Of a DNA stretch of 64,000 bases, positions 1,425 to 62,418 are shown one piece after another (the first letter of the stretch is position 1; the number at the start of each line of letters is the position of its first letter). The notes below the pieces were generated by a model. The model was not told the origin of the DNA and searched no databases. It saw nothing but the letters and a program-made list of their open reading frames with translations. This stretch comes from Macrostomum lignano (taxonomy: Eukaryota): assembly GCA_002269645.1 (NCBI GenBank), contig NIVC01003952.1:3907-67906 (forward strand), in the 5' to 3' direction. The translations under genes and the position numbers were made by a program.

Positions 1425-2168
1425 CTATTTAGTATAAACACCGCGTCTGGCCTTCACTGATGACAGAGCAGGCGGGACTCCGAGCAGCGAGGTGTCCTGT
1501 CCGCGGCTCAGCAGCTCCTCGTTCTGCAGGAACAAGTTGAACACCTCTGGGCTCAGCTTGGTTGCCGGGTCGTCAGGACTCGGAGGGATCACAGTCGGCG
1601 GCTGCTGTGCCACCAGATCGTCCAAGTAGGTCACCGCGTACAGAATGTAGCCGCCGTGAGCGCAGGGCACCACGATGACGTCATCCTTGCTGAGCAGGGC
1701 CAGCACCTCTTCGATTGATGAGGCTCTGGGGAGGCTGGCCACGTCCTCCTTGCTGGCAAGAAGCTGCAGGTCCTTCAAGCCGGGCTGGCACCACCTGGCA
1801 GCCGCAGGCTTCTGGCCGTTGGGGGAGGCTGCACCACCAGCTGAGCTGCGAGATGAAGCTGATAAGGCGGACACGCATGATGAGGATGAGGCGCCGGAGG
1901 AGTCTGAGGATGAGGATCCGGTCAGGGAGCAGGGCGATGATCGCTGCGTATCATCTGGTGAGGTCGCGGACTCGTGCCTCAGTTTTTGGTCATCGTTGAG
2001 CACAGTGAGAGCGCTGGAGATGGCGGGGAACAGACCGAGCAGATCCCGATCAGCTGATTCCCAAGTGCTCAGCTCAAAGATTCGCTCGTCAGCGTGTCTG
2101 CCAAGCCGCTTGATGAGATGCGACTCGGCTTTGCTGAACTGCTCGAATGGAGTCACTGCGGCTGGCAT
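1425..2168 (-). CDS. Uncharacterised 247-aa single-coding-exon ORF, copy A (MPAAVTPFEQF...RGVYTK*)
   Basis: GC-rich ORF in AT-rich flanks; near-identical copy at 53658..54383; CCAAT, GC and TATA-like motifs upstream. ATG 2168 is the more likely start than the TTG used in the track. Confidence 0.65.
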   Translation of the reverse strand: MPAAVTPFEQFSKAESHLIKRLGRHADERIFELSTWESADRDLLGLFPAISSALTVLNDDQKLRHESATSPDDTQRSSPCSLTGSSSSDSSGASSSSCVSALSASSRSSAGGAASPNGQKPAAARWCQPGLKDLQLLASKEDVASLPRASSIEEVLALLSKDDVIVVPCAHGGYILYAVTYLDDLVAQQPPTVIPPSPDDPATKLSPEVFNLFLQNEELLSRGQDTSLLGVPPALSSVKARRGVYTK

Positions 2169-2296
2169 CGTGCAGGCAGAGATGCTGAAGTTAGCAGGGC
2201 TTTGGTGAAACTGCAGATCAAACACCGTTGATGCTCTGTGCTTACTGGCAGCCTTTGGTCTTGGTGTAATTTGGAAGCCTTCGCTTGGATCGCAAC

Positions 2297-2401
2297 TTTA
2301 ATAGCCCTGCCCGCGCCCTCTGCCTGGGGGAGAGAGAGCGATTTCGGAACAGCGCGCCTGCCTGCCCTCCAACCCCACCCCCATGGATCCGCCCAGCCAA
2401 T
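2297..2401 (-). promoter_or_regulatory. Putative Pol II promoter of ORF copy A (CCAAT 2397-2401, GC box 2389-2394, TATTAAA 2303-2297)
   Basis: Motif order and spacing are the same as in copy B; TATA-like box ~130 nt before the ATG. Confidence 0.45.
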
Positions 2402-3332
2402 GGGCGCGCGACCTGGCTGGCGGCCCACCCCACAACCCCATTTTACTCCAACAAACCGACAACACCTCGCAAGCGGCCGTCCAAGTTCCAACAGGCGGCG
2501 CCTTGCCTTTCCCCTCAAGGCCTTCTCACCCACCACATCTTGCATAAGAGGACTTGCGCAAGCTGATTTAGCGTAACTAAACCCCCGCCGCGGCCGCAAG
2601 TCGGCCTCCTCCCCTTTCTCTAATGCGCCCCTTGTTGTCTTCTCTCTTATATAGTTTTAGTTTAGTCCCGTCCTTATACATACGCCACGAACACAATACT
2701 ACTATGAAAACTAAACCAAAGGCAGCTGCGCCCACCCCAACCACCCGGCGGCTTGTCACATCATTTTCACTTCGCTCCCTGGGTGGGAGGGTGTCGAGGG
2801 GAGTCGGAGACGAAATAAGGGGGGGGATAAAATGCTGGTCTATGGAGGGAAGGAAGGAATGCCTTAAAATCCCCAGAGGCCATGACAATCGCCTTGGCGG
2901 CTTGTGCAACTCGTGTGCCTTTATGACCCATTAAGCTAAACATTCAGCGCTTCGGCCATGAATATCCTCAGATATTCATTCCCAACCCTTCCCAATTCCC
3001 AATTCCCAATCCCATTCCATTCCCCTGGTTCCACCCCGCCCCTAGCTCTCTCGGTTAGATCAGATCCTCTTACTCCTCTAAGTAATAATAATACTAAATG
3101 CTCGTGTATTCTATAAGGATTTAGTAGATTAACTATTAGTAGTTCGTATGAGATATCTAAGTGAAATATTGTGGGCTTACTACATGTAAATACGTCAGGA
3201 ATGTCAAAGGAGCCACTTGGGAATGTCAGAGCAAACTACTTCGAATGTCAGGGTCAAATTGCTTATCTCACCTTATGGATTTCCAAATCCAAATGAATGA
3301 AGCAAGCATCGTCCGAGGTTCTCAAGTTTATC

Positions 3333-3614
3333 GAGGTTGTAGTTACGCTCGTAGAACGTTGGACTCACGACTTAAACGTCGGGGTTCGATTCCAGATCAC
3401 ACTGGAACAACTTGTGTCCTTGAGCAAGAGCTGTAAAATGGGTGCCAGCATTAGCTGCGGTAATTGAGGGTGTGTTTTGCGATACTCCCCAGACCTTGGA
3501 CTGAACAGCCGTACGCAGCCTTCAGATGCGCCGCGCAATAGCTGCGGCTGAGCTGTCAGTTGCACACCTGGCCCAATTGGGGCAGGTGTAATCAATTATT
3601 ATTATTATTATTAT
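3333..3614 (+). mobile_element. tRNA-derived SINE with a CORE/Meta-like central block and (ATT)n tail
   Basis: GGTTCGATTCC B box after a tRNA-like head; TGTGTCCTTGAGCAAG...GCTGTAAAATGGG resembles the conserved SINE core; 26-bp near-palindrome 3564..3589; (ATT)6 tail. Confidence 0.65.
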
Positions 3615-4715: not shown

Positions 4716-5502
4716 TAATAAGCGGCAATCTAGGTGGGGAAGAAAAAATTTAAGAGGTGATAAATAATTTATTTAGACAGGTGCCACACCAAATCACAGC
4801 TCTGCCAATGCCAAAAGACTTACTGATGGGGCCTGTTAGTTGACCTGGATTTCACTCTATTTAGTAAAATGAAATCCAAGCGATCAGATATTTGTCAGTC
4901 AGTCCCCAGCCCGGATTCGTGCCACAACCACAGGGTAAGGGGAATTCGGGGAAAAAATCCCCTCCAAAGCAAACAAATGCCAATGCAAAGGTGGGAATAG
5001 CTATAGGCCATGGAATAAAGTTTCCTCCTAAAGTCGAAAACCCGTTTTTAAGCGTCTGATGAAGATCAGTGACTCGAACTTCCATAGCCAACGCACGGCC
5101 CATCTTGACAACGAATCCCAAACCTGTCTTTCCATGAGTTTGAGTCACGGTTTTTGTCAAAATAAAATAAATGAGCACAATTCTCAAATCGAACAGTCAG
5201 AAATGATGGATTGATTAACTGACTGATTTGGTTTTCAGTTGAATTGTAGGTATTCGTTAAACGGTCGGTATACCCCATTAGAAATAGATATGTGAAAACT
5301 TGCACGGATAGTGTGCTACAGACTTTGTTTGAACTGGCTAAAAATAAAACAAAGTTGAAATCCTTCAAAGTTGTCGCATCGATTACATCAGTTAAGTGCA
5401 GAGCTTTGATTTCTCTTTAGTCAATAATCATATATACTCGTATTCTCTTTTTAGTTCTGCAATTTCCTTCGAAACACAAGAATCATAAAGTATGATAATC
5501 AG

Positions 5503-7098
5503 AGTGTGAGAATCATAAAATGAGATTCTCATTCGATGCGTGAGACTCATACAGTGAGATTCTCATTCAAAGCAAGAGAATCATAAAATGAGATTCTCAT
5601 TCGATGCGTGAGACTCATACCGTGAGAGTCTCATTCGATGCGTGAGACTCATACCGTGAGAGTCTTATTCAATTCGTGAGACTCATACAGTGAGATTCTT
5701 ATTCAATTCGTGAGAATCATGCAGTGAGATTCTCATTCAAAGCGTGAGAATCATGCAGTGAGATTTTCAATTCAAAGCGTGAGACTCATACCGTGAGATT
5801 CTCAATTCAAAGCGTGAGAATCATGCAGTGAGATTCTCATTCAAGGCGTGAGAATCATAGAGTGAGATTCTCATTCAAAGTGTGAGAATCATGCAGTGAG
5901 GTTCTCTTTCAAAGTGTGAGAATCATGCAGTGAGATTCTCTTTCAAAGTGTGAGAATCATGCAGTGAGATTCCCATTCAAAGTGTGAGAATCATGCAGTG
6001 AGATTCTCATTCAAAGAATCATAGAGTGAGATTCTCATTCAAAGAATCATAGAGTGAGATTCTCATTCAAAGAATCATAGAGTGAGATTCTCATTCAAAG
6101 AATCATAGAGTTAGATTCTCATTCAAAGAATCATAGAGTGAGATTCTCATTCAAAGAATCATAGAGTGAGATTCTCATTCAAAGAATCGTAGAGTGAGCT
6201 TCTCATTCAAAGAATCATAGAGTGAGATTCTCATTCAAAGAATCGTAGAGTGAGATTCTCATTCAAAGAATCATAGAGTGAGATTCTCATTCAAAGAATC
6301 ATAGAGTGAGATTCTCATTCAAAGAATCATAGAGTGAGCTTCTCATTCAAAGAATCGTAGAGTGAGCTTCTCATTCAAAGAATCATAGAGTGAGATTCTC
6401 ATTCAAAGAATCATAGAGTGAGATTCTCATTCAAAGAATCATAGAGTGAGATTCTCATTCAAAGAATCATAGAGTGAGATTCTCATTCAAAGAATCATAG
6501 AGTGCGATTCTCATTCAAAGAATCATAGAGTGCGATTCTCATTCAAAGAATCAGAGTGAGATTCTCATTCAAAGAATCATAGAGTGAGATTCTCATTCAA
6601 AGAATCATAGAGTGAGATTCTCATTCAAAGAATCATAGAGTGAGATTCTCATTCAAAGAATCATAGAGTGAGATTCTCATTCAAAGAATCATAGAGTGAG
6701 ATTCTCATTCAAAGAATCATAGAGTGAGATTCTCATTCAAAGAATCATAGAGTGAGATTCTCATTCAAAGAATCATATACAGTGAGATTCTCATTCAAAG
6801 AATCATAGAGTGAGATTCTCATTCAAAGAATCATAGAGTGAGATTCTCATTCAAAGAATCATAGAGTGAGATTCTCATTCAAAGAATCATAGAGTGAGAT
6901 TCTCATTCAAAGAATCATAGAGTGAGATTCTCATTCAAAGAATCATATACAGTGAGATTCTCATTCAAAGAATCATATACAGTGAGATTCTCATTCAAAG
7001 AATCATAGAGTGAGATTCTCATTCAAAGAATCATAGAGTGAGATTCTCATTCAAAGAATCATAGAGTGAGATTCTCATTCAAAGCGTGAGAATCATAC
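5503..7098. repeat. Satellite with a 34-bp unit at its 5' side and a 28-bp unit AGAATCATAGAGTGAGATTCTCATTCAA in the core
   Basis: Periods measured at 5711/5745 (34) and 6001/6029 (28). Confidence 0.97.
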
Positions 7099-7656
7099 AT
7101 GGCGAGATCATTTTTCAGGCAGGACTTTATAGCCTATAGGTTGAGTCTTGTCTGTCTGATTCTGCTAATTACTGACTGACTGACAAGCATTTAACAACAC
7201 ATCCACCTGCGTAACGATCTCATTGCTGAATGTTCATGGAAAACTTGCCTATTTTCGTATAGAGCCGCAATGCAAAGAATATCTATAATAATTGATTTTA
7301 GTCAGCGAGACCGCCGCCCACCTTTAATCTCTCATCATCTGAGTGTCGGACTGGTTTTCCTGTTCCAGGCTTCAGTGTTTCTCACAGTCCCTCATACCAA
7401 AAGTCTTTTATGCAGAACTTCTGCAGAGCTGGAATCCATTAGCATTCAAGAGTTTAAAATTAATTTCTTAATTACTTTTGGCCTCGTGCCAGGCGTGCAT
7501 TTCAAGTGCAATGAAAGTAGAAATTTCTGGCGCTCGGCTTGTGCACGGTTTCAATAAAAGTACAAAACAAATAATTCGGAGTACTTTTGATGCCAACTGT
7601 GTATTTGAATAGTAGCAGAATGTGATACTTGAGTAGCTTTCATTTTCTCATTTTTC

Positions 7657-12361: not shown

Positions 12362-13598
12362 GTGTGAATGCATTGCAAGAAATGAGTGAATAAGGAACGG
12401 GAACTGTGTGACTGCATTGCGAGAAATAAGTGAATAAGGAAGGGGAACTGTGTGACTGCATTGCGAGAAATGAGTGAATAAGGAACGGGAACTGTGTGAC
12501 TGCATTGCAAGAAATGAGTGAATAAGGAAGGGGAACTGTGTGACTGCATTGCGAGAAATGAGTGAATAAGGAAGGGGAACTGTGTGACTGCATTGCAAGA
12601 AATGAGTGAATAAGGAACGGGAACTGTGTGAATGCATTGCGAGAAATGAGTGAATAAGGAACGGGAACTGTGTGACTGCATTGCGAGAAATGAGTGAATA
12701 AGGAACGGGAACTGTGTGACTGCATTGCGAGAAATGAGTGAATAAGGAAGGGGAACTGTGTGAATGCATTGCGAGAAATGAGTGAATAAGGAACGGGAAC
12801 TGTGTGACTGCATTGCGAGAAATGAGTGAATAAGGAACGGGAACTGTGTGACTGCATTGCAAGAAATGAGTGAATAAGGAAGGGGAACTGTGTGACTGCA
12901 TTGCGAGAAATGAGTGAATAAGGAAGGGGAACTGTGTGACTGCATTGCAAGAAATGAGTGAATAAGGAAGGGGAACTGTGTGACTGCATTGCGAGAAATG
13001 AGTGAATAAGGAAAGGGAACTGTGTGACTGCATTGCAAGAAATGAGTGAATAAGGAACGGGAACTGTGTGAATGCATTGCGAGAAATGAGTGAATAAGGA
13101 ACGGGAACTGTGTGACTGCATTGCGAGAAATGAGTGAATAAGGAACGGGAACTGTGTGAATGCATTGCGAGAAATGAGTGAATAAGGAAGGGGAACTGTG
13201 TGAATGCATTGCGAGAAATGAGTGAATAAGGAACGGGAACTGTGTGACTGCATTGCGAGAAATGAGTGAATAAGGAACGGGAACTGTGTGACTGCATTGC
13301 AAGAAATGAGTGAATAAGGAAGGGGAACTGTGTGACTGCATTGCGAGAAATGAGTGAATAAGGAAGGGGAACTGTGTGACTGCATTGCAAGAAATGAGTG
13401 AATAAGGAACGGGAACTGTGTGAATGCATTGCGAGAAATGAGTGAATAAGGAAGGGGAACTGTGTGAATGCCTTGCGAGAAATGAGTGAATAAGGAAGGG
13501 GAACTGTGTGACTGCATTGCGAGAAATGAGTGAATAAGGAAGGGGAACTGTGTGACTGCATTGCGAGAAATGAGTGAATAAGGAAGGGGAACTGTGTA
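12362..13598. repeat. 44-bp minisatellite GAACTGTGTGACTGCATTGCGAGAAATGAGTGAATAAGGAACGG (~28 copies)
   Basis: Period 44; open in all three minus frames, giving the 414-425 aa artefact ORFs. Confidence 0.97.
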
Positions 13599-19904: not shown

Positions 19905-43585
<23,681 letters not shown>

Positions 43586-45098
43586 GGTCTGATTTAAACA
43601 CTTTCCACTAGGTGTGTTGACGAAATCAGAAAATGAGATCTTTAGTACAGTGCCACCAACAGCACTAGTTAAAGCGAGTACTGCTTGTAACTCGAACTTC
43701 CGAGTATAGAACAGACAGTTTCCTGAACAGTCACTGAAGTTGATATTATTTAAAGCATTAAATCATTAAAAATATTTACAGGTCTCCAATTAGATAAAAT
43801 AAAGCAAATGCTGTAAAATTATTATTCATTAGTACATGTTTAAATTATATACTTACATATATTAGTGTAAGTTTTATCTGCTTAACTAAAAACAACAAAA
43901 ACTATATGTCATAAAACAATGATACTCATTGCAGATGAGTCCATAAACTATTGGGGATTCCTCTCAAATATGACCTCAAGTTTGGGACTTGGTCAAGCCT
44001 AGACTAAGCTAGATTCTTCTTTTTTCCACCTTGCCATCTTTTAGTTAATTGATAGATAAAATGACTTTTTAAAAAAAGTCAAAGAATTTATTAGGACGAT
44101 ATTAGATTTTGAATGCTACAGTAATAATTCATGGATTTTTTGCATTTGTTGTAAGTGTTATATGAGTTTTTAACTCTTGGGGTTAGCTATATACAAGCTA
44201 TCTCTAGTATAGTGCATAGGCATATAGTAGTAACCAAATAATTTTTAATGTTTTTTGCATTTATCTATGACTTATATCATCTTGCAAATTTTTAGTCATA
44301 GTTTCAATATTATTTATTAGAGATGGAACAAATATCAGATTTTACCAAATCTGAATACCAAATATTTATATATAAACTTTCTGAATAATGAATACCAAAT
44401 ACTGAATATCAAATACTGAAAACCAAATACCAAAGACTGAATATTTATAGGCATAAACTTCGAATGAATTGACATTTTTATCCCATTTAAAAAGCAAAAC
44501 AACTGTTGGATTTTTTCAACTTATGACGCAAGTTGCACCAAATTCAAATATTACAGTCAGCCTCTATACCAGTTTTTCCCACTATTTCTAGGACAACCCT
44601 TGTACTTTAAAATTGGACTGTATGTTAGACTGATAAACATAAAGAATATATTGCTTTTTAATGCTATGTCAATTTTTTATATCTATAGCCATTTTTTGTA
44701 TCTAACAATATATTTTCATACTTATGATAAGGCATCAAAAAATCTTTGCTGATCATAAATAGTAACTTTATTCAATGTGACTATATTGTATAGTACTTTC
44801 CCTGTTATAATAAATACCAATGCAAAGGTCATTATTATTATAGATTAAATATATTTATAATTCTAAAGAATAATGACACTTACTTAGTCTTGAATTTAAT
44901 TTCAATATGACTAAAAGCTATTAGTTTTACTAATACTATTACATTGCATTTGAAAATTTCTATTAATATTCTTAACTTGATAATATTATAGCTATAAATA
45001 GGCCTACCTATTGAATAGGCCTAATATCTATGTTTAATATGATGTTTTAGTTATTTAATTATATTTATAGATTATAAATTTATATATATATATATATA

Positions 45099-48512: not shown

Positions 48513-49399
48513 CCCCCCAAGCCTTGACATCTCAAGACATAAACACTTTTAAATGACACTTCTAGTATGTTTGACTTGACGCTTCTTGCATTCTTGCGTA
48601 CTCCTGAAAGCTCCTGCAGAAACTTTTGTACTCCCTGCAGGAACCCAATTTTGCACTTTTCTATACATTTTAAACAATCTATACATACGAGCGTACGAGT
48701 ATCTTTCAGTGCACATTTGGCTTGGCACATTCATGCTAATGCTTCATGCTAAATACTTCTTGCGCCCAAACAATTGACCGTGAACTATTGGTCCTATTAT
48801 TCTATTTACTATAACAGAACTGCTAATTCTGCCTTATGCGAGGATATTGAAAGGTGCTAAATTTTTGTTGAAAAAATACACAAGCTCCAATCTACCGTAT
48901 ATACAGCTGGAAGAAGTTGCATTGGTGACAATGACGCAATCAATTTTGATGCATTTATAGTTAGCGAAGATCTGTTGTTGGTGCTATTGTTCCACACACC
49001 ACAGGCAAGACCGAGAATTCGCACCTCAGTGTGTTTATACGTTAAGGAACCGAGCATCGGGGCTATATAATGTTGCACAGGTATTCTATTCATAAGTTAC
49101 GCAAGCCTATGCAATATCATCATTAGAGTTTGCAGCAGATGTGCGATTTCAGTCTAAATAAAATAACTGTTTAAAACAGACGGTCAATTTTATATGGCTA
49201 CTAATACGAGCGTAGTAAATCAAATTTACCTTGAATTGTTTCAGTGTTTCTCCCGAGAGTTTGACGCCTGGCTATACCTTCATCACCCGAAACACCTCAT
49301 AATTGGGCTCTGAGCTGTGTATATTTCGAGGCATTTAGACTTTTAATATTTATTAAGGCACTGCACTGATCAAGTTTGTGAGACGCCAGTTTGAAGACC

Positions 49400-50960
49400 A
49401 AAGGGGTTTATGAGCCGTCAAATTGGTTTATGGAAGACCAAAAGTGGTTTATGAGCCGCCAAATTGGTTTATGAAAGACCAAAAGTGGTTTATGAGCCGC
49501 CAAATTGGTTTATGAAAGACCAAAAGTGGTTTATGAGCCGCCAAATTGGTTTATGGAAGATCAAAGTGGTTTATGAGCAGCCAAATTGGTTTATGAAAGA
49601 CCAAAAGTGGTTTATGAGCCGTCAAATTGGTTTATGGAAGATCAAAGTGGTTTATGAGCCGCCAAATTGGTTTATGGAAGATCAAAGTGGTTTATGAGCC
49701 GCCAAATTGGTTTATGGAAGATCAAAGTGGTTTTTGAGCCGCCAATTTGGTTTATGGAAGATCAAAGTGGTTTATGAGCCGTCAAATTGGTTTATGGAAG
49801 ATCAAAGTAGTTTATGAGCCGCCAAATTGGTTTATGGAAGATCAAAGTGGTTTATGAGCCGTCAGATTGGTTTATGGAAGATCAAAGTGGTTTATGAGCC
49901 GTCAAATTGGTTTATGGAAGATCAAAGTGGTTTATGAGCCGCCAAATTGGTTTATGGAAAATCAAAGTGGTTTATAAGCCGCCAAATTGGTTTATGGAAA
50001 ATCAAAGTGGTTTATGAGCCGCCAAATTGGTTTATGGAAGATCAAAGTGGTTTATGAGCCGCCAAATTGGTTTATGGAAGATCAAAGTGGTTTATGAGAC
50101 GCTAAATTGGTTTATGGAAGATCAAAGTGGTTTATGAGCCGCCAAATTGGTTTATGGAAGATCAAAGTGGTTTATGAGCCGCCAAATTGGTTTATGGAAG
50201 ATCAAAGTGGTTTTTGAGCCGCCAATTTGGTTTATGGAAGATCAAAGTGGTTTATGAGCCGTCAAATTGGTTTATGGAAGATCAAAGTAGTTTATGAGCC
50301 GCCAAATTGGTTTATGGAAGATCAAAGTGGTTTATGAGCCGTCAAATTGGTTTATGGAAGATCAAAGTGGTTTATGAGCAGCCAAATTGGTTTATGAAAG
50401 ACCAAAAGTGGTTTATGAGCCGTCAAATTGGTTTATGGAAGATCAAAGTGGTTTATGAGCCGCCAAATTGGTTTATGGAAGATCAAAGTGGTTTATGAGC
50501 CGCCAAATTGGTTTATGGAAGATCAAAGTGGTTTTTGAGCCGCCAATTTGGTTTATGGAAGATCAAAGTGGTTTATGAGCCGTCAAATTGGTTTATGGAA
50601 GATCAAAGTGGTTTTTGAGCCGCCAATTTGGTTTATGGAAGATCAAAGTGGTTTATGAGCCGTCAAATTGGTTTATGGAAGATCAAAGTAGTTTATGAGC
50701 CGCCAAATTGGTTTATGGAAGATCAAAGTGGTTTATGAGCCGTCAAATTGGTTTATGGAAGATCAAAGTGGTTTATGAGCCGTCAAATTGGTTTATGGAA
50801 GATCAAAGTGGTTTATGAGCCGTCAAATTGGTTTATGGAAGATCAAAGTAGTTTATGAGCCGCTAAATTGGTTTATGGAAGATCAAAGTGGTTTCTGAGA
50901 CGCTAAATTGGTTTATGAGACGCTAAATTGATTTATGAGATGCAAACTTGGTTTATGGAA
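49400..50960. repeat. 40-bp minisatellite (20+20 dimer) TTTATGAGCCGCCAAATTGG-TTTATGGAAGATCAAAGTGG (~39 copies)
   Basis: Period 40; variant units recur at 480 bp. Confidence 0.97.
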
Positions 50961-51412
50961 GAGTAGGAAGACCAAAAAACTTTTAGAGGGTTGGATTCGC
51001 TTCTAAGAAATTATTCCTGATTCTAGGGTTTATTATGTACTGGGCAAGCGAAGCGATTGTGCCTTAGTAGACGAAATACAGGTTTAATTACAGGTGAAAT
51101 CTATTAGAGAACCTTCAAGACTTAACTAATTATTCAATTTTGGGGGTTGCGATTTTATATTTTATTTAAAAGCTTTCCTATATAGATTGTGGCAGCCCCT
51201 TACCCAGCTGGTATAGACACCTGATCAATGTGCAGTCAAGGATTTCAGATGCGATTCTATAATTGCCTGCATACATATATACCGAATTGCAAATGCAGCT
51301 AAATGTATGGCTAATATAAATCTAAGATGTTAAAACAAACCCATGCAGTTTTAAATCACAATTAAGATCTGTCATTCAAAAGTCACACACTTTACTAGAC
51401 TTTAAATCTATA

Positions 51413-52966
51413 GAGTCAGATCCCGACTCTATATTGTGTCAGATCCCGACTCTATATTGTGTCAGATCCCGACTCTATATTGTGTCAGATCCCGACTCTA
51501 TATTGTGTCAGATCCCGACTCTATATTGTGTCAGATCCCGACTCTATATTGTGTCAGATCCCGACTCTATATTGTGTCAGATCCCGACTCTATATTGTGT
51601 CAGATCCCGACTCTATATTGTGTCAGATCCCGACTCTATATTGTGTCAGATCCCGACTCTATATTGTGTCAGATCCCGAATCTATACTATGTCAGATCCC
51701 GACTCTATATTGTGTCAGATCCCGATTCTATATTGTGTCAGATCCCGACTCTATATTGTGTCAGATCCCGAATCTATACTATGTCAGATCCCGACTCTAT
51801 ACTATGTCAGATCCCGACTCTATAATGTGTCAGACTCCGACTCTATACTGTCAGACCCCGACTCTATATTATGTCAGATCCCGACTCTATACTATGTCAG
51901 ATCCCCCACTCTATATTGTGTCAGATCCCGACTCTAAATTGTGTCAGATCCTGACTCTATATATTATGTCAGATCCCGACTCTATATTATGTCAGATCCC
52001 GACTCTATATTGTGTCAGATCCTGACTCTATATATTATGTCAGACCCCGACTCTATATTATGTCAGATCCCGACTCTATACTGTGTCAGATCCCGACTCT
52101 ATATTGTGTCAGATCCCGACTCTATATTCTGTCAGATCCCGACTCTAAATTGTGTCAGATCCCGACTCTAAATTGTGTCAGATCCCGACTCTATATTGTG
52201 TCAGATCCTGACTCTATATTGTGTCAGATCCCGACTCTATACTGTGTCAGATCCCGACTCTATATTGTGTCAGATCCCGACTCTATATTGTGTCAGATCC
52301 CGACTCTATATTGTGTCAGATCCCGACTCTATATTGTGTCAGATCCCGACTCTATATTGTGTCAGATCCCGATTCTATATTGTGTCAGATCCCGACTCTA
52401 TATTGTGTCAGATCCCGACTCTATATTGTGTCAGATCCCGAATCTATACTATGTCAGATCCCGACTCTATATTGTGTCAGATCCCGACTCTATATTGTGT
52501 CAGATCCCGACTCTATATTGTGTCAGATCCCGAATCTATACTATGTCAGACCCCGACTCTATATTGTGTCAGATCCCGATTCTATATTGTGTCAGATCCC
52601 GACTCTATATTGTGTCAGATCCCGAATCTATACTATGTCAGATCCCGACTCTATACTATGTCAGATCCCGACTCTATAATGTGTCAGACTCCGACTCTAT
52701 ACTGTCAGACCCCGACTCTATATTATGTCAGATCCCGACTCTATACTATGTCAGATCCCCCACTCTATATTGTGTCAGATCCCGACTCTAAATTGTGTCA
52801 GATCCTGACTCTATATATTATGTCAGATCCCGACTCTATATTATGTCAGATCCCGACTCTATATTGTGTCAGATCCTGACTCTATATATTATGTCAGACC
52901 CCGACTCTATATTATGTCAGATCCCGACTCTATATTATGTCAGATCCCGACTCTATACTATGTCAG
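51413..52966. repeat. 23-bp minisatellite GTCAGATCCCGACTCTATATTGT (~67 copies)
   Basis: Direct reading; 854-bp higher-order duplication. Confidence 0.97.
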
Positions 52967-53130
52967 AGGCTGCATACTGTGGCTCTATGCTCAATACTAT
53001 TGTAGATGTGTAAGTCTATGAGTCTATCCGTGTCAAAAGTAGAAACAATACAGTGTAGCGATCAAATACTATTATTATATATTTTCTGCGCGTCCCCCCA
53101 GTTCATAAGGTCAGAAAGAGTTAGGGCTAA

Positions 53131-53260
53131 AGGCTCATTCACAATGCCATCAAACGAGCCACCAAATCACACGACCAATTTACAAAGGAATCAAATTTGA
53201 TGTACAAATTGTGTGATCAAACCTAATTTGGTATTATTTGATGGCAGTGTGAACGAGCCT
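53131..53260. mobile_element. PIF/Harbinger (Tourist-like) MITE, 130 bp
   Basis: 24-bp TIR AGGCTC(A/G)TTCACA(A/C)TGCCATCAAA; TAA on both sides (53128-30, 53261-63). Confidence 0.8.
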
Positions 53261-53424
53261 TAAATTAGTGGAACCCTTCGCAATGTCGGTCCGAGTGACT
53301 GAGACCAGTAGGCCAGTGAGTTAACGCCAACGCCAATTCTGAATGACCAAGTTCAAGTTCAGAGTGCAGAAAGTCCGAGGAGAAGGGGAGGGTGATGGGC
53401 GGCCGCCAGCCAGGTCGCGCGCCC

Positions 53425-53529
53425 ATTGGCTGGGCGGATCCATGGGGTGGGGGTTGGAGGGCAGGCAGGCGCGCTGTTCCAAAATCGCTCTCTCTCCCTC
53501 AGGCAGAGGGCGCGGGCAGGGCTATTAAA
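53425..53529 (+). promoter_or_regulatory. Putative Pol II promoter of ORF copy B (ATTGG 53425, GGGCGG 53432, TATTAAA 53523)
   Basis: Same motifs as copy A; candidate 61-nt 5'UTR intron 53581..53641 (GTAAGC...GCTAACTTCAG). Confidence 0.45.
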
Positions 53530-53657
53530 GTTGCGATCCGAGCGAAGGCTTCCAAATTACACCAAGGCCAAAGGCTGCCAGTAAGCACAGAGCATCAACG
53601 GTGTTTGACCTGCAGTGACACCAAAGCCCTGCTAACTTCAGCATCTCTGCCTGCACG

Positions 53658-54383
53658 ATGCCAGCCGCAGTGACTCCATTCGAGCAGTTCAGCAAAGCCG
53701 AGTCGCATCTCATCAAGCGGCTTGGCAGACACGCTGACGAGCGAATCTTTGAGCTGAGCACTTGGGAATCAGCTGATCGGGATCTGCTCGGTCTGTTCCC
53801 CGCCATCTCCAGCGCTCTCACTGTGCTCAACGATGACCAAAAACAGAGGCACGAGTCCGCGACCTCACCAGATGATACGCAGCGATCATCGCCCTGCTCC
53901 CTGACTGGATCCTCATCCTCAGACTCCTCCGGTGCCTCATCCTCATCATACGTGTCCGCCTTCTCAGCTTCATCTCGCAGCTCAGCTGGTGGTGCAGCCT
54001 CCCCCAGCGGCCAGAAGCCTGCGGCTGTCAGGTGGTGCCAGCCCGGCTTGAAGGACCTGCAGCTTCTTGCCAGCAAGGAGGACGTGGCCAGCCTCCCCAG
54101 AGCCTCATCAATCGAAGAGGTGCTGGCCCTGCTCAGCAAGGATGACGTCATCGTGGTGCCCTGCGCTCACGGCGGCTACATTCTGTACGCGGTGACCTAC
54201 TTGGACGATCTGGTGGCACAGCAGCCGCCGACTGTGATCCCTCCGAGTCCTGACGACCCGGCAACCAAGCTGAGCCCCGAGGTGTTCAACTTGTTCCTGC
54301 AGAACGAGGAGCTGCTGAGCCGCGGACAGGACGCCTCGCTGCTCGGAGCCCCGCCTGCTCTGCCATGCCTGCAGCATTTCTAG
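53658..54383 (+). CDS. Uncharacterised 241-aa single-coding-exon ORF, copy B
   Basis: 10 substitutions and no indels versus copy A over ~235 codons (hand count); different last ~7-13 codons. Confidence 0.65.
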   Translation: MPAAVTPFEQFSKAESHLIKRLGRHADERIFELSTWESADRDLLGLFPAISSALTVLNDDQKQRHESATSPDDTQRSSPCSLTGSSSSDSSGASSSSYVSAFSASSRSSAGGAASPSGQKPAAVRWCQPGLKDLQLLASKEDVASLPRASSIEEVLALLSKDDVIVVPCAHGGYILYAVTYLDDLVAQQPPTVIPPSPDDPATKLSPEVFNLFLQNEELLSRGQDASLLGAPPALPCLQHF

Positions 54384-57988: not shown

Positions 57989-58353
57989 TCACATCTGGTG
58001 CCGGAATCTGCAGTCGGTTCGTCGGCACTCGCCGGTGGAAAACCAGGCTCGACAGACGCCTCGCGGAGCCTGCTGCTGCTGGCCGGGTGGCCCTGGAGGC
58101 CGGTGATGCCGCTGCCTGGGCGACCCGTTGGCGGCGGCCTGTGCAGCACTGGAGGCGGATGCGGATACCGTTGATGTTGCTGCGGAGGCTGCTGAGGCGG
58201 CGGCCGGTAGGACGGATAGGAGGCTACGCCGGGCGGCGGATGGCTGAACGCGGAGGCCGGCGGTAGCGATGAGGACTGCGGCAGCATCTGCGGATGAGGC
58301 AGATTCTGCTGCTGCTGCTGCTGCTGCTGACAGGCGGGCAGGCTGGCCAGGAC
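57989..58353 (-). CDS. PPP1R10: PNUTS last exon: Pro/Gln-rich region and CCCH zinc finger VCRAWFSTGECRRTDCRFRHQM* (one frameshift)
   Basis: tcgcag| acceptor; C-x8-C-x4-C-x3-H just before the stop, as expected at the PNUTS C-terminus; 365 nt, one base short of a multiple of 3. Confidence 0.8.
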
Positions 58354-58394
58354 CTGCGAAATAGAAGGGGGAATAGTTCTATAATAATTGATTC

Positions 58395-59162
58395 AAATTG
58401 ATGGGCGATTCTTGATGAATTTGATGGGCGATTCTTAGAGAATTTGATGGGCGATTCTTGATGAATTTGATGGGCGATTCTTGATGAATTTGATGGGCGA
58501 TTCTTGATGAATTTGAGGGGCGATTCTTGATGAATTTGATGGGCGATTCTTGATGAATTTGATGGGCGATTCTTGATGAATTTGATGGGCGATTCTTGAT
58601 GAATTTGATGGGCGATTCTTAGAGAATTTGATGGGCGATTCTTGATGAATTTGATGGGCGATTCTTGATGAATTTGATGGGGATTCTTGATGAATTTGAT
58701 GGGCGATTCTTGATGAATTTGATGGGCGATTCTTGATGAATTTGATGGGCGATTCTTGGGGAATTCGATGGGCGATTCTTGGGAATTTAAACAGGCGATT
58801 CTTGATGAATTTGATGGGCGATTCTTGATGAATTTGATGGGCGATTCTTGATGAATTTGATGGGCGATTCTTAGAGAATTTGATGGGCGATTCTTGGGGA
58901 ATTTGATGGGCGATTCTTGATGAATTTGATGGGTGATTCTTGGGGAATTTGATGGGCGATTCTTGGGGAATTTAACAGGCGATACTTGATGAATTTGATG
59001 GGCGATTCTTGATGAATTTGATGGGCGATTCTTGATGAATTTGATGGGCGATTCTTGATGAATTTGATGGGCGATTCTTGATGAATTTGATGGGCGATTC
59101 TTGGGGAATTTGATGGGCGATTCTTGATGAATTTGATGGGCGATTCTTGGGGAATTTGATGG
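58395..59162. repeat. 23-bp minisatellite GATGAATTTGATGGGCGATTCTT in the last PNUTS intron
   Basis: Direct reading. Confidence 0.96.
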
Positions 59163-59302
59163 GGTTTGTAGAGCGCAGGAAAAAAGCAGCAAAATTTGGT
59201 GCACAGCAATTCTTTATGAGATGTGACAAAGGCAAATTTCGCTTCAAAAAGTTGGCATAGCGGTCACTGAATCGGCCGAGTTAAAATTAAGCATCCAATT
59301 AC

Positions 59303-59583
59303 CTGCGGGAACATGCCGCTGGCGGCCAATTCCTCTTTCAACGGTTCAAGCAGGCTTCGAATTCTATCCACAGTAAGATCCTCGGTTCTCTGCAGGTGCA
59401 AATCTGGATACCTCGAACGCAGCAGTCGCCAAAGAGCCTCTTTGGGCGTCTGGTTGGCGGCAGCGGTGGCAGAGGTGGAGCGGCGGCGGAGGCGGCGGTG
59501 TCAACTGCGGGCGACGGCTGGTTCGGGACACCGGCGGACGCCGTGGTGAGGTTGCGGGTGACCTGTTTGAGAATGTCGGCCAC
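59303..59583 (-). CDS. PPP1R10: PNUTS middle exon (one frameshift)
   Basis: tcgcag|GTG GCC GAC...TTC CCG CAG|GTAATT; 281 nt, one base short of a phase 0-0 exon. Confidence 0.7.
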
Positions 59584-59644
59584 CTGCGAGGTGGGGGGAT
59601 GGAGTTTCAGTTTTCCGGTTGGTTATGAAATTACTACTAACGCT

Positions 59645-60282
59645 CGCTTCCGCTTCCAGCTTCCGCTTCCAGCTTCCGCTTCCAGCTTCCGCTTCCAGCT
59701 TCCGCTTCCAGCTTCCGCTTCCAGCTTCCGCTTCCAGCTTCCGCTTCCAGCTTCCGCTTCCAGCTTCCGCTTCCAGCTTCCGCTTCCAGCTTCCGCTTCC
59801 AGCTTCCGCTTCCAGCTTCCGCTTCCAGCTTCCGCTTCCAGCTTCCGCTTCCAGCTTCCGCTTCCAGCTTCCGCTTCCAGCTTCCGCTTCCAGCTTCCGC
59901 TTCCAGCTTCCGCTTCCAGCTTCCGCTTCCAGCTTCCGCTTCAGCTTCCGCTTCCAGCTTCCGCTTCCAGCTTCCGCTTCCAGCTTCCGCTTCCAGCTTC
60001 CGCTTCCAGCTTCCGCTTCCAGCTTCCGCTTCCAGCTTCCGCTTCCAGCTTCCGCTTCCAGCTTCCGCTTCCAGCTTCCGCTTCCAGCTTCCGCTTCCAG
60101 CTTCCGCTTCCAGCTTCCGCTTCCAGTTTCCGCTTCCAGCTTCCGCTTCCAGCTTCCGCTTCCAGCTTCCGCTTCCAGCTTCCGCTTCCAGCTTCCGCTT
60201 CCAGCTTCCGCTTCCAGCTTCCGCTTCCAGCTTCCGCTTCCAGCTTCCGCTTCCAGCTTCCGCTTCCAGCTTCCGCTTCCAG
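59645..60282. repeat. 13-bp minisatellite CGCTTCCAGCTTC in a PNUTS intron (~49 copies)
   Basis: Direct reading; source of the FRFQLPLPASASS and WKRKLEAEAGSGS ORFs. Confidence 0.97.
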
Positions 60283-60349
60283 CTACTATTAGTTCCCTTC
60301 CTAGCCTGACAATATAGACCTCGCTAATTCGGCTCTCGCAATGACTCAC

Positions 60350-62418
60350 CTCGTCTTTCAAAGCCAAACCGCCGTCCGAAGATCTGCTAATCGTCATCAG
60401 AAGGTCGGAGACGCTGCTGGCCACTGATGCTGCCGTGGAGGCGGCTGTCGTAGTCAATGTCGACGTTGCTGTAACAGCCGACGACGCTGCTGAGGACAGC
60501 GCTGCTGACGTTGGTGCAGCTGTCGAAGTTGAAGACGTTGAAGATACCGCCGCAGCCACTGCCACAGCGACCGAATCCGGCGATGGAAGAATTGATGCAG
60601 AAACAGTAGCAGATGGAGTACCGGCACTAGAAGCCACCGGTTGCTCCTGCTTCGGCTTCTGCTGTTGCTCTGGCTTTGCCTGCTGCTGAGGCGTCGCTGC
60701 AGAAGTCGTAGGCGGCGGCGACGCAGGCTTGGATACCTCTTCGAGCGGGATAATTTTTGGCTCCTCAGCGTCCGCATGCTCAACGTCAGGCTCAGCCGGA
60801 CTGGGTGGCACCGCTTCGCGGCTAAAATAAATCACCTGCAGAATGGCCTCCTGGCGCTTGGCCTGGCGGGCCCGCTCGTGGATTTCCGGCCGCTATTGGA
60901 CTCGCAGCGAACGGCGGCAGGTCGCTGATTGGCCGCGGCCGGTACCACTGCGGCGGCCGGCCCAGCTGCAGACGGTGCGGAGCCGCCGGGTTGCTTGAAG
61001 ACAAATCGGACGACGAATCGTCCATGGCCCCGTCCATTAGGCCCTCTTTGCGGGCTTTATTAAGCAATTCGCGCTCCCTGACGTGCTCCTGCTTGGACAT
61101 CTCTTCAACGCTCTGCCGATTGACATTGACTCGTTCGGTTTCGTCCAGCTCGAAGTAGGACACCTGCTCCAGCTCGCCGGCTGGCGCCCAGCTGACCCCG
61201 GCCGGACTTCTTGTTGCCGGAGGAGGCGGCAGCAGCTGACTCAGGCTTCTTCGGGCTTGTCGCCGATGATGAGTCAGGCTGAGCTGTCGTCGATTGCAGG
61301 CCGGCACGCAGGCGACTCGGGCGTTGTTGGCGTTGTTGCGTTGCTGTTGCCGCCGCTGTCCTTCTTCCGTTTTCGCACCAGCTTGGCGGAGCCACCGGCT
61401 GCGTGCTGTTGCTGCTGCTCAGTGCCGCCACCAGCGCCAGAATGGCCGCCATTGGAGAACAGCGAGTCCATGAAGCCGGAGTCCAGATGCAGCTCACCGG
61501 CTGGCCGTTTCTTTTGCTGTTGCTGCTGTTGCTGCTGCTGCTGGTTGTTGCTGCTGCCGGGTATGCTTTTAGGAGAATCTGACGGCGTTGGCTTGACGCT
61601 GATAGACGCGTGAATAGACTCAGGTCCGTGTCCGGTCGCTTCCGTTTCGCCGCGGACGGACCTTCGACGGCTTCGCTTTTAAATTTTGACGAGGAAGCAG
61701 CGGCGCCAGCTCCGGATGACGACGACGACGACGGCGAGGACGATGTCAGCTCGTCCGAGGCGAGCAGGTTGGTGTCGCGAAAATGCGACGGAGCGGTGCG
61801 GGCAGTCGATGGTATCTTACGCGGCTGCTGTTGCTTCTTCTCAGACTGCTTCTCAGTTGAACGTCGCTGCTGCTGCTGCTGCTGCTCTTCGCCACCGCTG
61901 TCCAGCCGTTTTCTCTTGTGCTCGGAAGGACCGGTGCCTTTCTCGCTAGCCGGCAACGACGCCTGCTGCGGCTGAGGCGGCAGTTCCGCTTTGATCTGGT
62001 CCATCCACTTGTCAACTAGGCTGGCGGCCAGGTCAGACAGCTCGGCCTGGTTCTTTGGCCTTGGCAATCTGCTTCACCATCTTGGCTGAATCGTTGCTCC
62101 TTAGCATGTCCAGAGTGACGGGCAGGCGGTGGAACACCTCGAGCAGCAGCTTCTCCAGGCCCGGTTCTCATCTCGCCGGGCCTCCGCTAGCCACTGATTT
62201 AACAGCTGCCAGCCACCGTTCTTGCACAGCGCGGCCATCTTGTCCGTGGTCGTGTACTTGATCACGTTCAGCATGATGGCCTTGGCCACGAGTTTATTAG
62301 CCGACAGCATTCTGTCGTAGAGTTTCGGCACCGAGTCTGCCGCCCGGATGCCGCCATTTGAGTCGATCAGGCCGTCTCTGGCCAGCGACTTAAAATACTC
62401 AAGTCTTTGTTCGGTTGC
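60350..62418 (-). CDS. PPP1R10: PP1 nuclear-targeting subunit PNUTS, large exon (TFIIS-N-like domain, PP1-binding region); several frameshifts in this sequence
   Basis: GGWQLLNQWL...LPVTLDML..NDSAKMVKQI...LAASLVDKWM; LDSGFMDSL..KLVRKRKK; VSW..YFELDETERVNVN; EPD...PKIIPLEE. tttcag| acceptor and |GTGAGT donor. The motifs fall in different frames. Confidence 0.88.

What the first reader, a model, noticed from the sequence alone, without database searches (positions are those of the whole stretch)
1462..2432. Orphan promoter+ORF cassette duplicated in inverted orientation 52 kb apart (partner ~53395..54366)
Seen: a ~970-bp GC-rich block occurs twice, minus strand here and plus strand at ~53.4-54.37 kb. 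Identity starts just upstream of a CCAAT/GC-box/TATTAAA set. It spans a candidate 61-nt 5'UTR intron (GTAAGC...GCTAACTTCAG) and stops ~10 codons before the stop, so the C-termini differ (LSSVKARRGVYTK vs LPCLQHF). The flanks are unrelated, and I see no TIR, TSD, LTR or poly(A). Of 10 coding substitutions (7 nonsynonymous, 3 synonymous; hand count), 7 fall in the Ser-rich linker (codons ~63-127). Codons 1-62 and ~128-205 are identical. Inference: either a lineage-specific multicopy gene family homogenised by gene conversion, or the cargo of an unrecognised mobile unit. I cannot match the protein to any known family. This is the best novelty candidate in the window.
Basis: partly seen in the sequence, partly recalled or inferred. 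Interest (0 to 1): 0.72.

Follow-up and report, generated by a model that had tools for sequence, protein, structure and literature searches.

The report
Duplicated flatworm orphan gene pair
The repeat is real, but it is two neighbouring copies of a small Macrostomum lignano (flatworm) gene of unknown function that matches no protein outside that species, already annotated as hypothetical proteins; it arose by an ordinary local DNA duplication, not as a mobile element.

Summary
Window 1460-2425 (-) and 53401-54366 (+) are a 966-nt inverted repeat, 946/966 identical with no gaps and unrelated flanks. The window is Macrostomum lignano contig NIVC01003952.1 (assembly Mlig_3_7). Both ORFs are already annotated there as hypothetical proteins: copy A is Mlig009103g3 and copy B belongs to Mlig031071.

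The annotation holds 8 copies, all at the same two syntenic sites. Three contigs carry the same outward-facing A/B pair, 44-51 kb apart, around a DENND5-like gene. Two more contigs begin just before a B copy. All 8 copies share the same breakpoints. I found no TIR, TSD, LTR or poly(A), and no copy in a third genomic context among the 8 annotated ones. The multiplicity is therefore two paralogues multiplied by the known hidden polyploidy and assembly redundancy of this species.

Eleven differences are fixed between A and B, so homogenisation is weak. One B copy carries a short A-derived conversion tract. The protein has no homologue among 1.84 billion representative proteins, no Pfam or PDB match and no confident fold.

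Two modules (codons 1-62 and 128-205) show no amino-acid change in any of the 8 copies, while the Ser-rich linker evolves at about the flank rate. That points to a real, constrained protein. This is an ordinary species-restricted paralogue pair of low to moderate interest.

The parts
1460..2425 (-). Copy A of the 966-nt duplicated block: core promoter, 5'UTR with candidate intron, and codons 1-236
   Evidence: The block has no substitutions (only homopolymer indels) between the A copies of contigs NIVC01000044.1 and NIVC01002648.1.
53401..54366 (+). Copy B of the 966-nt duplicated block
   Evidence: Four further B copies on other contigs are 98.9-100% identical.
1425..2168 (-). ORF A, 247 aa plus stop. 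The last 11-12 codons (SSVKARRGVYTK) come from the A-specific flank. It lies inside annotated gene BOX15_Mlig009103g3.
53658..54383 (+). ORF B, 241 aa plus stop. The last 5-6 codons (PCLQHF) come from the B-specific flank. It is identical to a deposited Mlig031071 protein (P0002).
53422..53529 (+). Promoter-like motifs of copy B: inverted CCAAT (CCCATTGGCTGG, 53422-53433), GC-box GGGGTGGGG (53444-53452), TATTAAA (53523-53529). Motif matches only; function was not tested.
   Evidence: sequence
2297..2404 (-). The same promoter-like motifs in copy A: CCAAT 2404-2393, GC-box 2381-2373, TATTAAA 2303-2297
   Evidence: sequence
53581..53641 (+). Candidate 61-nt 5'UTR intron of copy B (GTAAG donor, CTAAC branch-like motif, CTTCAG acceptor). 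The acceptor also fits the M. lignano SL trans-splice motif [T/C]TNCAG.
   Evidence: motifs from PMC8629364. The donor is not verified by any data available here.
2185..2245 (-). The same candidate 61-nt intron in copy A. Its acceptor (intron ends at 2185, exon starts at 2184) is the one used by the deposited gene model.
3272..3309 (-). A-specific upstream exon of the deposited model Mlig009103 (ATG...AAG|GTGAGA). It is spliced over a 1,087-nt intron (3271-2185) that contains the whole duplicated promoter. It adds 18 probably spurious N-terminal residues (MLASFIWIWKSISISACT).
20934..43717 (-). Context: a DENND5-like gene (uDENN, DENN, dDENN, RUN, PLAT exons; annotated product 1,552 aa) lying between the two copies. 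The extent is approximate.

Best explanation
The block is a small gene found only in Macrostomum lignano. It consists of a core promoter, a short 5'UTR with an intron or trans-splice acceptor, and an intronless ORF of about 240 aa.

The gene was copied once, at the DNA level, as a unit of about 966 bp into a site about 50 kb away in inverted orientation. The result is two outward-facing paralogues (Mlig009103 = A, Mlig031071 = B) on either side of a DENND5-like gene.

The copied unit ended a few codons before the original stop, so at least one copy reads into its flank to a new stop and uses a new 3'UTR. Copy A has also acquired an upstream, A-specific 5' exon.

The duplication predates the split of the homeologous or allelic chromosome copies of this hidden polyploid. 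That is why the assembly holds 3 A and 5 B copies, all with identical breakpoints.

The paralogues now evolve mostly independently, with occasional short ectopic gene conversion.

The product is inferred to be a soluble, acidic, non-secreted protein. It has two constrained modules (residues 1-62, predicted helical at very low confidence; residues 128-205, predicted helix plus beta-hairpin, equally low confidence) joined by a fast-evolving, 34%-serine, probably disordered linker. Its biochemical role is unknown.

Shown: the repeat, its boundaries, copy number in the annotation, synteny, fixed differences, the conversion tract, absence of homologues and the pattern of constraint. Inferred: the order of events, promoter use, splicing of the 61-nt intron and protein properties.
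For: Identity and boundaries.

Organism and annotation: the only database cluster is M. lignano, with 6 distinct sequences named Mlig009103g1-3 and Mlig031071g2, g3 and g5, plus one listed without a name. The window is contig NIVC01003952.1.

Recurrent architecture: the A/B pair is outward-facing on NIVC01003952.1 (spacer 50,975 nt), NIVC01000044.1 (about 47.9 kb) and NIVC01002648.1 (about 43.9 kb). B alone lies at the starts of NIVC01002453.1 and NIVC01001104.1. A always lies near an MFS sugar-transporter gene. B lies upstream of a Med26-like gene on three other contigs, and a DENN/RUN/PLAT gene lies on its promoter side on the two contigs where the fetched locus reaches that far.

Common origin: all 8 copies switch from shared to locus-specific sequence at the same bases, and the flanks hit only their syntenic counterparts.

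Age: 11 A/B differences are fixed across contigs. Outside the two invariant modules, A and B differ by 3.5-4.3%. B-locus flanks differ by about 2.2% between haplogroups.

Conversion: B_2648 carries the A state at positions 217, 218 and 445, flanked by B states.

Constraint: across all 8 copies, codons 1-62 and 128-205 (420 nt) have one variable site, which is synonymous (H171H). The 195-nt linker has 9 variable sites. Between B haplogroups the modules have 0-1 changes, where 9.2 are expected at the flank rate (P about 1e-4 to 1e-3).

Transcription: Mlig_3_7 gene models are built from RNA-seq-guided assemblies, and name prefixes are 95%-identity transcript clusters (PMC5730564). The deposited A model uses the shared acceptor.

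Protein properties: no hydrophobic N-terminus, maximum 19-residue Kyte-Doolittle hydropathy (KD19) 1.54, pI 5.1, linker 34% Ser.
Against: Overall dN/dS between A and B is 0.80 and cannot be distinguished from 1. The two invariant modules also lack synonymous differences between A and B, so part of their identity could be due to conversion rather than selection.

Three of the 8 annotated copies are frameshifted (P0001, P0004, P0006). All the indels lie in homopolymer runs. Contigs 3952 and 1104 differ by 14 indels and 0 substitutions over 1.5 kb, so assembly error is likely. Pseudogenes are not excluded.

I could not inspect RNA-seq, SL, RAMPAGE or poly(A) tracks. I could not search the whole genome at the DNA level, so unannotated extra copies cannot be excluded. 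Without an outgroup, neither the parental copy nor the duplication mechanism can be identified.
Confidence: 0.8

Rival explanations
1. Concerted evolution. The duplication is old, and its 98% identity is maintained mainly by recurrent gene conversion between the inverted copies.
For: Two stretches of 249 and 226 nt have no A/B difference even at synonymous sites, while the rest of the block differs by 3.5-4.3%. B_2648 carries a tract of at least 229 nt of A states. A_2648 and B_2648 share the same 1-nt deletion.
Against: Eleven differences are fixed between all A and all B copies. A/B pairs on the same contig (15-18 differences) are no closer than pairs on different contigs (15-20). Homology ends abruptly with no decayed similarity in 3 kb of flank, so the block is the original duplication unit, not a converted island within an older, larger duplication. 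The invariant stretches coincide with the two predicted structured modules. They are also invariant among B haplogroups whose flanks differ by 2.2%, as purifying selection predicts. The shared deletion lies in a C4 run in an assembly with frequent homopolymer indels.
Confidence: 0.2
2. The block is cargo, or a fragment, of an unrecognised transposable element (Pack-MULE, Helitron-like capture or another non-autonomous unit).
For: A promoter-plus-ORF unit was copied with sharp ends into an unrelated site. The genome is rich in TEs and repeats (PMC5730564).
Against: No TIR, TSD, LTR or poly(A) tail occurs at or near the ends. No transposase, RT or other Pfam domain is present on either strand. 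All 8 annotated copies occupy just two syntenic sites with identical junctions. The flanks are single-copy within about 200 kb of sampled sequence.
Confidence: 0.05
3. The ORF is fortuitous. The unit is a non-coding transcript or a decaying pseudogene pair in GC-rich DNA.
For: dN/dS is 0.80, not significant. There are no homologues, no domain, and structure-model confidence (pLDDT) is about 40. Long antisense ORFs of 177-208 aa also occur in the same GC-rich sequence. Three annotated copies are frameshifted.
Against: The ORF is open in 5 of 8 copies, and the frameshifts are homopolymer indels typical of this assembly. No amino-acid change occurs in 140 codons across 8 copies, while the linker, the promoter region and the flanks vary. 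GC3 (0.69) > GC1 (0.60) > GC2 (0.51) in the annotated frame, an order I take from general knowledge to be typical of coding sequence in GC-rich genes; I did not compare it with other M. lignano genes.
Confidence: 0.15
4. One copy is an assembly artefact (a chimeric or mis-joined contig).
For: Mlig_3_7 is a redundant long-read assembly of a polyploid with many indel errors (PMC5730564).
Against: The same A...B arrangement, with copy-specific flanks and diagnostic substitutions, recurs on three separately assembled contigs.
Confidence: 0.02

Closest known systems
Taxonomically restricted (orphan) genes of Macrostomum and other flatworms, e.g. the flatworm-specific genes surveyed in PMC5816591
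   Same: A short protein with no recognisable domain and no homologue outside the lineage, annotated only as 'hypothetical protein', with transcript-based gene models.
   Different: No expression pattern or phenotype is known. The gene IDs are absent from the searchable literature and from the held supplements of that paper. I did not compare it with Mlig-sperm1 or any other named gene.
Local inverted segmental duplications (paralogue pairs in palindrome-like arrangement) that undergo arm-to-arm gene conversion, as on mammalian sex chromosomes (from general knowledge)
   Same: Inverted orientation, high identity, a whole gene with its promoter in each arm, and at least one conversion tract.
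   Different: The arms are only about 1 kb long with a spacer of about 50 kb. Divergence is 2% with 11 fixed differences, so homogenisation is weak. There is no evidence of inversion of the spacer: the DENND5-like gene lies on B's promoter side on both contigs where the fetched locus reaches it.
Homeologous or allelic duplicate blocks of the M. lignano Mlig_3_7 assembly (180 Mb of non-repetitive blocks at least 95% identical; PMC5730564)
   Same: This explains why each paralogue appears 3-5 times in the assembly with syntenic flanks.
   Different: The A/B pair itself lies within one contig and has non-homologous flanks, so it is a true paralogous duplication and not assembly redundancy.
Gene-fragment capture by Pack-MULEs or Helitrons (from general knowledge)
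   Same: A sharply bounded copy of a promoter plus most of a CDS sits at an unrelated site, truncated just before the stop.
   Different: The defining element termini (TIR plus TSD, or 5'-TC...CTRR-3' with a hairpin) are absent, and there are no dispersed copies.

Membership tests
Transposable element or its cargo | Terminal inverted repeats or LTRs bracketing the unit | tested here: not met
   Inverted and direct repeat search of about 3-4 kb around each copy finds only chance-size matches of 14-25 nt, and none brackets the block.
Transposable element or its cargo | Target-site duplication at the junctions | tested here: not met
   The junction sequences of A and B share no direct repeat.
Transposable element or its cargo | Copies dispersed in unrelated genomic contexts | tested here: not met
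   All 8 annotated copies lie in two syntenic contexts. A whole-genome DNA search was not possible, so unannotated copies remain untested.
Transposable element or its cargo | Encoded or nearby transposase, RT or integrase | tested here: not met
   No Pfam hit above cut-off on the sense or antisense ORFs.
Retrocopy / processed pseudogene | Lacks the promoter and introns of the parent; has a poly(A) tract and a TSD | tested here: not met
   The block includes about 155 nt upstream of the TATA-like box and the 61-nt candidate intron. It ends inside the CDS with no A-run.
DNA-level paralogous (segmental) duplication | A collinear, gap-free high-identity block with sharp ends, both copies stably placed in conserved synteny | tested here: met
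   946/966 identities with no gaps. The junctions are identical in 3 A and 5 B copies on 5 contigs.
Concerted evolution by gene conversion | Paralogues within a chromosome copy are more alike than orthologues or homeologues between copies; mosaic tracts are present | tested here: inconclusive
   There is one short tract (B_2648, positions 217-445) and a shared homopolymer deletion. However, 11 differences are fixed, and same-contig pairs show no excess similarity.
Taxonomically restricted (orphan) protein-coding gene | No detectable homologue outside the lineage | tested here: met
   Only the M. lignano cluster is found among 5.8 billion clusters and in an exhaustive phmmer search of 1.84 billion representatives. 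No Pfam or PDB match. How well those libraries cover other Macrostomum species is unknown.
Taxonomically restricted (orphan) protein-coding gene | Transcribed and translated | not testable with these tools
   The evidence is indirect only. The deposited models derive from RNA-seq-guided assembly (PMC5730564).
Any curated protein family (Pfam-A) | Score above the family gathering threshold | tested here: not met
   The best hits are DUF2064 at 15 bits (cut-off 25.8) and ICAM D2 at 15.4 bits (cut-off 27.5).

The most novel reading that the evidence does not exclude
The gene is a young, possibly de novo-born, Macrostomum-specific protein with two selectively constrained modules. Its promoter-plus-CDS cassette was copied by a non-transposon route such as template switching or ectopic double-strand-break repair. 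The resulting inverted pair then exchanges sequence by conversion across a spacer of about 50 kb containing DENND5. That would make it a compact natural case for studying how a new gene acquires a second promoter or 5' exon and a new C-terminus.
Probability: 0.12. Interest if true: 0.4.

Novelty: new member of a known kind. Interest (0 to 1): 0.2.

Why it matters
It matters little beyond Macrostomum genomics.

- It is a cleanly delimited young gene duplicate in which the copied unit includes the core promoter but misses the last codons. Each copy therefore has its own C-terminus and 3'UTR, and one copy has gained an upstream 5' exon.
- For users of the Mlig_3_7 annotation, the eight 'genes' under two names are two loci.
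- Three deposited proteins are probably frameshifted by homopolymer assembly errors.
- The 18-residue N-terminal extension of Mlig009103 is probably a 5'UTR artefact.

Tried and rejected
- Pfam on both ORFs, on the antisense ORFs and on the upstream ORF gave nothing above cut-off ([coordinate error], 8, 51).
- The word-indexed search of 5.8 billion clusters and the exhaustive phmmer search of 1.84 billion representatives returned only the protein's own M. lignano cluster.
- The PDB sequence search gave a best E-value of 1.1, which is meaningless.
- AlphaFold2 single-sequence models of the full protein and of residues 120-235 had mean pLDDT 40.9 and 39.2. I ran no fold search, because matches from such models would be meaningless.
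- A sensitive BLASTN of 3-kb flanks for decayed homology found nothing.
- A TIR/TSD search around both copies found nothing.
- tblastn of the protein against the window plus 8 loci found no additional or degenerate copies.
- Rfam and ARAGORN on the tRNA-like-looking stretch upstream of the A-specific exon (about 3330-3440) gave no tRNA or SINE call.
- Searches for the gene IDs in the literature and in the held supplements of PMC5816591 gave no hits.
- My first attempt to measure inter-contig flank divergence was swamped by tandem repeats. I repeated it with unique flanks and single HSPs.
Full report

Yes. The repeat finder reports one long inverted pair, arms 1460-2425 and 53401-54366, 966 nt, 98% complementary, 50,975 nt apart. 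Every other large repeat in the window is a tandem array. BLASTN of the two regions in gene orientation gives 946/966 identities and no gaps.

- The ORFs are A = 2168..1425 (-), 247 aa, and B = 53658..54383 (+), 241 aa.
- In the shared codons 1-235 there are 7 nonsynonymous and 3 synonymous differences. The 257 nt upstream of the ATG hold 9 differences.
- Two of the 20 mismatches are really offsetting G-run length differences.
- Homology stops abruptly. Three kb of flank on each side give no significant alignment even with word size 7. No TIR, TSD or poly(A) brackets either copy.

**2. Where does the window come from?**

The protein hits one cluster only: six distinct Macrostomum lignano sequences, five of them named BOX15_Mlig009103g1-3 or Mlig031071g2/g3/g5 and one listed without a name. 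Copy B's protein is in the collection exactly. Copy A's ORF lies inside P0003 (Mlig009103g3, 265 aa).

The encoding contigs show that the window is NIVC01003952.1 of assembly GCA_002269645.1 (Mlig_3_7), roughly bases 3907-67906. Both copies are therefore already deposited as hypothetical proteins.

**3. Copy number and context**

All annotated copies were retrieved.

| Contig | Copies | Arrangement |
|---|---|---|
| NIVC01003952.1 (the window) | A + B | outward-facing, spacer 50,975 nt |
| NIVC01000044.1 | A + B | outward-facing, spacer about 47.9 kb |
| NIVC01002648.1 | A + B | outward-facing, spacer about 43.9 kb |
| NIVC01002453.1 | B only | contig starts just upstream of B |
| NIVC01001104.1 | B only | contig starts just upstream of B |

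- On the two other contigs that carry A, an MFS sugar-transporter gene lies about 8.5-9.5 kb beyond it; on the window contig the locus ends before that point.
- B lies upstream of a Med26-like gene on three other contigs. A gene with uDENN, DENN, dDENN, RUN and PLAT domains (DENND5-like) lies on its promoter side on the two contigs where the fetched locus reaches that far.
- Within the window, I confirmed DENN, dDENN, RUN and PLAT exons on the minus strand between about 20.9 and 41.9 kb. The two copies therefore flank that gene.
- In an alignment of all 8 copies with 360-nt flanks, every A and every B copy switches from shared to locus-specific sequence at the same bases.
- The flanks match only their syntenic counterparts, and tblastn finds no further copy in about 200 kb of sampled sequence.

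Published context explains the rest of the multiplicity. Mlig_3_7 contains 180 Mb of non-repetitive blocks that are at least 95% identical, because the sequenced line carries extra large chromosomes, and transcripts sharing a name prefix are 95%-identity clusters (PMC5730564). M. lignano is a hidden polyploid after a recent whole-genome duplication (PMC10468722).

The 'family' of eight is therefore two paralogous loci multiplied by homeologous, allelic or redundant contigs. This rejects both the mobile-unit reading and the misassembly reading.

**4. History of the two paralogues**

- The three A copies have no substitutions among them, and their flanks differ by at most 0.1%.
- The B copies form four haplotypes (0-11 substitutions). 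Their flanks fall into two haplogroups about 2.2% apart.
- Eleven positions are fixed differences between all A and all B copies.
- A and B on the same contig differ by 15-18 substitutions. A and B on different contigs differ by 15-20.

The duplication therefore predates the divergence of these chromosome copies, and the paralogues are not being strongly homogenised.

There is one clear exception. B on contig 2648 carries the A state at block positions 217, 218 and 445, with B states on both sides. This is a conversion tract of 229 to about 320 nt.

A_2648 and B_2648 also share a 1-nt deletion. It lies in a C4 run. All indels among the copies are in homopolymers, and contigs 3952 and 1104 differ by 14 indels and no substitution over 1.5 kb. 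I therefore treat these indels, and the frameshifted proteins P0001, P0004 and P0006, as probable assembly errors.

The lack of any decayed similarity beyond the block ends argues that 966 bp is the original duplicated unit, not a converted island inside an older and larger duplication.

**5. Gene structure**

The deposited model of copy A is two coding exons, 3309..3272 and 2184..1425.

- Its donor, however, is a GTGAG 1,087 nt upstream, in A-specific sequence. That intron spans the whole duplicated promoter.
- The 18 extra N-terminal residues come from an in-frame ATG in that exon and are probably not part of the protein.
- The donor GTAAG and the acceptor CAG fit the published M. lignano cis-splice motifs. 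CTTCAG also fits the SL trans-splice acceptor motif [T/C]TNCAG (PMC8629364).

So the acceptor has indirect transcript support, through the deposited model. The 61-nt intron and the TATA-proximal start site remain predictions. I could not inspect expression tracks.

**6. Is it a real protein, and what kind?**

Homology and structure:
- No homologue was found in an exhaustive phmmer search of 1.84 billion representatives.
- There is no Pfam hit above cut-off and no PDB match.
- Single-sequence AlphaFold models are unreliable, with pLDDT about 40.

Selection:
- Overall dN/dS between A and B is 0.80, not significant.
- Variation is strongly patterned, however. Across all 8 copies, codons 1-62 and 128-205 (420 nt) have a single variable site, and it is synonymous.
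- By contrast, the 65-codon linker has 9 variable sites (6 nonsynonymous) and codons 206-236 have 5.
- Between B haplogroups the modules show 0-1 changes, where 9.2 are expected at the flank rate (P about 1e-4 to 1e-3). The linker changes at about the flank rate.
- Between the window copies, the two difference-free stretches are significant (P about 4e-4).
- GC3 > GC1 > GC2 in the annotated frame.

Physical properties:
- The protein has no signal-peptide-like N-terminus and no transmembrane-grade segment.
- Its pI is 5.1 and the linker is 34% serine.

I infer a soluble intracellular protein with two constrained modules and a disordered, possibly phosphorylatable linker. I put the probability that it is a functional protein at about 0.65-0.7. 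Its function is unknown.

**7. Verdict**

It is wrong on the mobile-unit alternative and on the degree of homogenisation.

What is there is an ordinary, already-annotated pair of young paralogues of an orphan gene. It was produced by a local inverted DNA duplication and multiplied in the assembly by polyploidy. Novelty: new member of a known kind. Interest is low to moderate.

Noticed in passing
window 4336-63407 (25 arrays, e.g. 5499-7099, 12362-13597, 26826-28873, 49393-50962, 51415-52967): About 20.9 kb (33%) of the window consists of 25 unrelated minisatellite or microsatellite arrays with periods of 4-57 nt (TRF score at least 400). Many lie inside introns of the DENND5-like gene. Differences in spacer length between homeologous contigs (43.9, 47.9 and 51.0 kb) probably reflect array expansion and contraction.
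   Followed up: partly
window 32426-32507 (+): An intact tRNA-Ser(CGA) gene (Rfam 66.8 bits) lies within the span of the minus-strand DENND5-like gene, so it is probably intronic and antisense to it.
   Followed up: no
window ~20934-43717 (-): A DENND5/Rab6IP1-like gene (uDENN, DENN, dDENN, RUN and PLAT exons; annotated product 1,552 aa) occupies much of the spacer between the two copies (about 23 of 51 kb).
   Followed up: partly
window ~58000-62400 (-); L002 18444-18725: Downstream of copy B, three other contigs carry an 863-908-aa gene with a weak Med26 hit. On this contig only a 93-aa gene is called at about the same place. The model here may be broken by indel errors or by the tandem arrays at 58.4-60.3 kb.
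   Followed up: no
L001, L003, L007, L008 versus the window copies: All indels among the 8 copies lie in homopolymer runs. Contigs NIVC01003952.1 and NIVC01001104.1 differ by 14 indels and 0 substitutions in 1.5 kb. The frameshifted deposited proteins PAA57707.1, PAA56236.1 and PAA56233.1 are therefore likely assembly artefacts.
   Followed up: partly
A locus (L004, L005, L007) versus B locus (L002, L006, L008): The same three contigs are nearly identical around copy A (0-2 substitutions per 1-1.4 kb stretch, about 3.4 kb compared). Around copy B, about 50 kb away, they are about 2.2% diverged with many indels. This suggests a recent loss of heterozygosity, or recombination or conversion between chromosome copies, that covers the A side only.
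   Followed up: no
window 53130-53261 (+): A 132-nt hairpin (25-nt arms, 92% complementary, 82-nt loop) lies about 140 nt upstream of the copy B block. It is possibly a MITE-like element.
   Followed up: no
window ~3330-3440 (-): Just upstream of the A-specific 5' exon is a stretch that looks like a tRNA T-arm (GGAATCGAACCCC). ARAGORN and Rfam do not call it. It could be a SINE remnant supplying the alternative start.
   Followed up: partly
window 1675-2208 (+) and 53525-54151 (-): Antisense ORFs of 177 and 208 aa overlap the gene in both copies. They have no Pfam hit and are most likely a by-product of the 60% GC content.
   Followed up: partly
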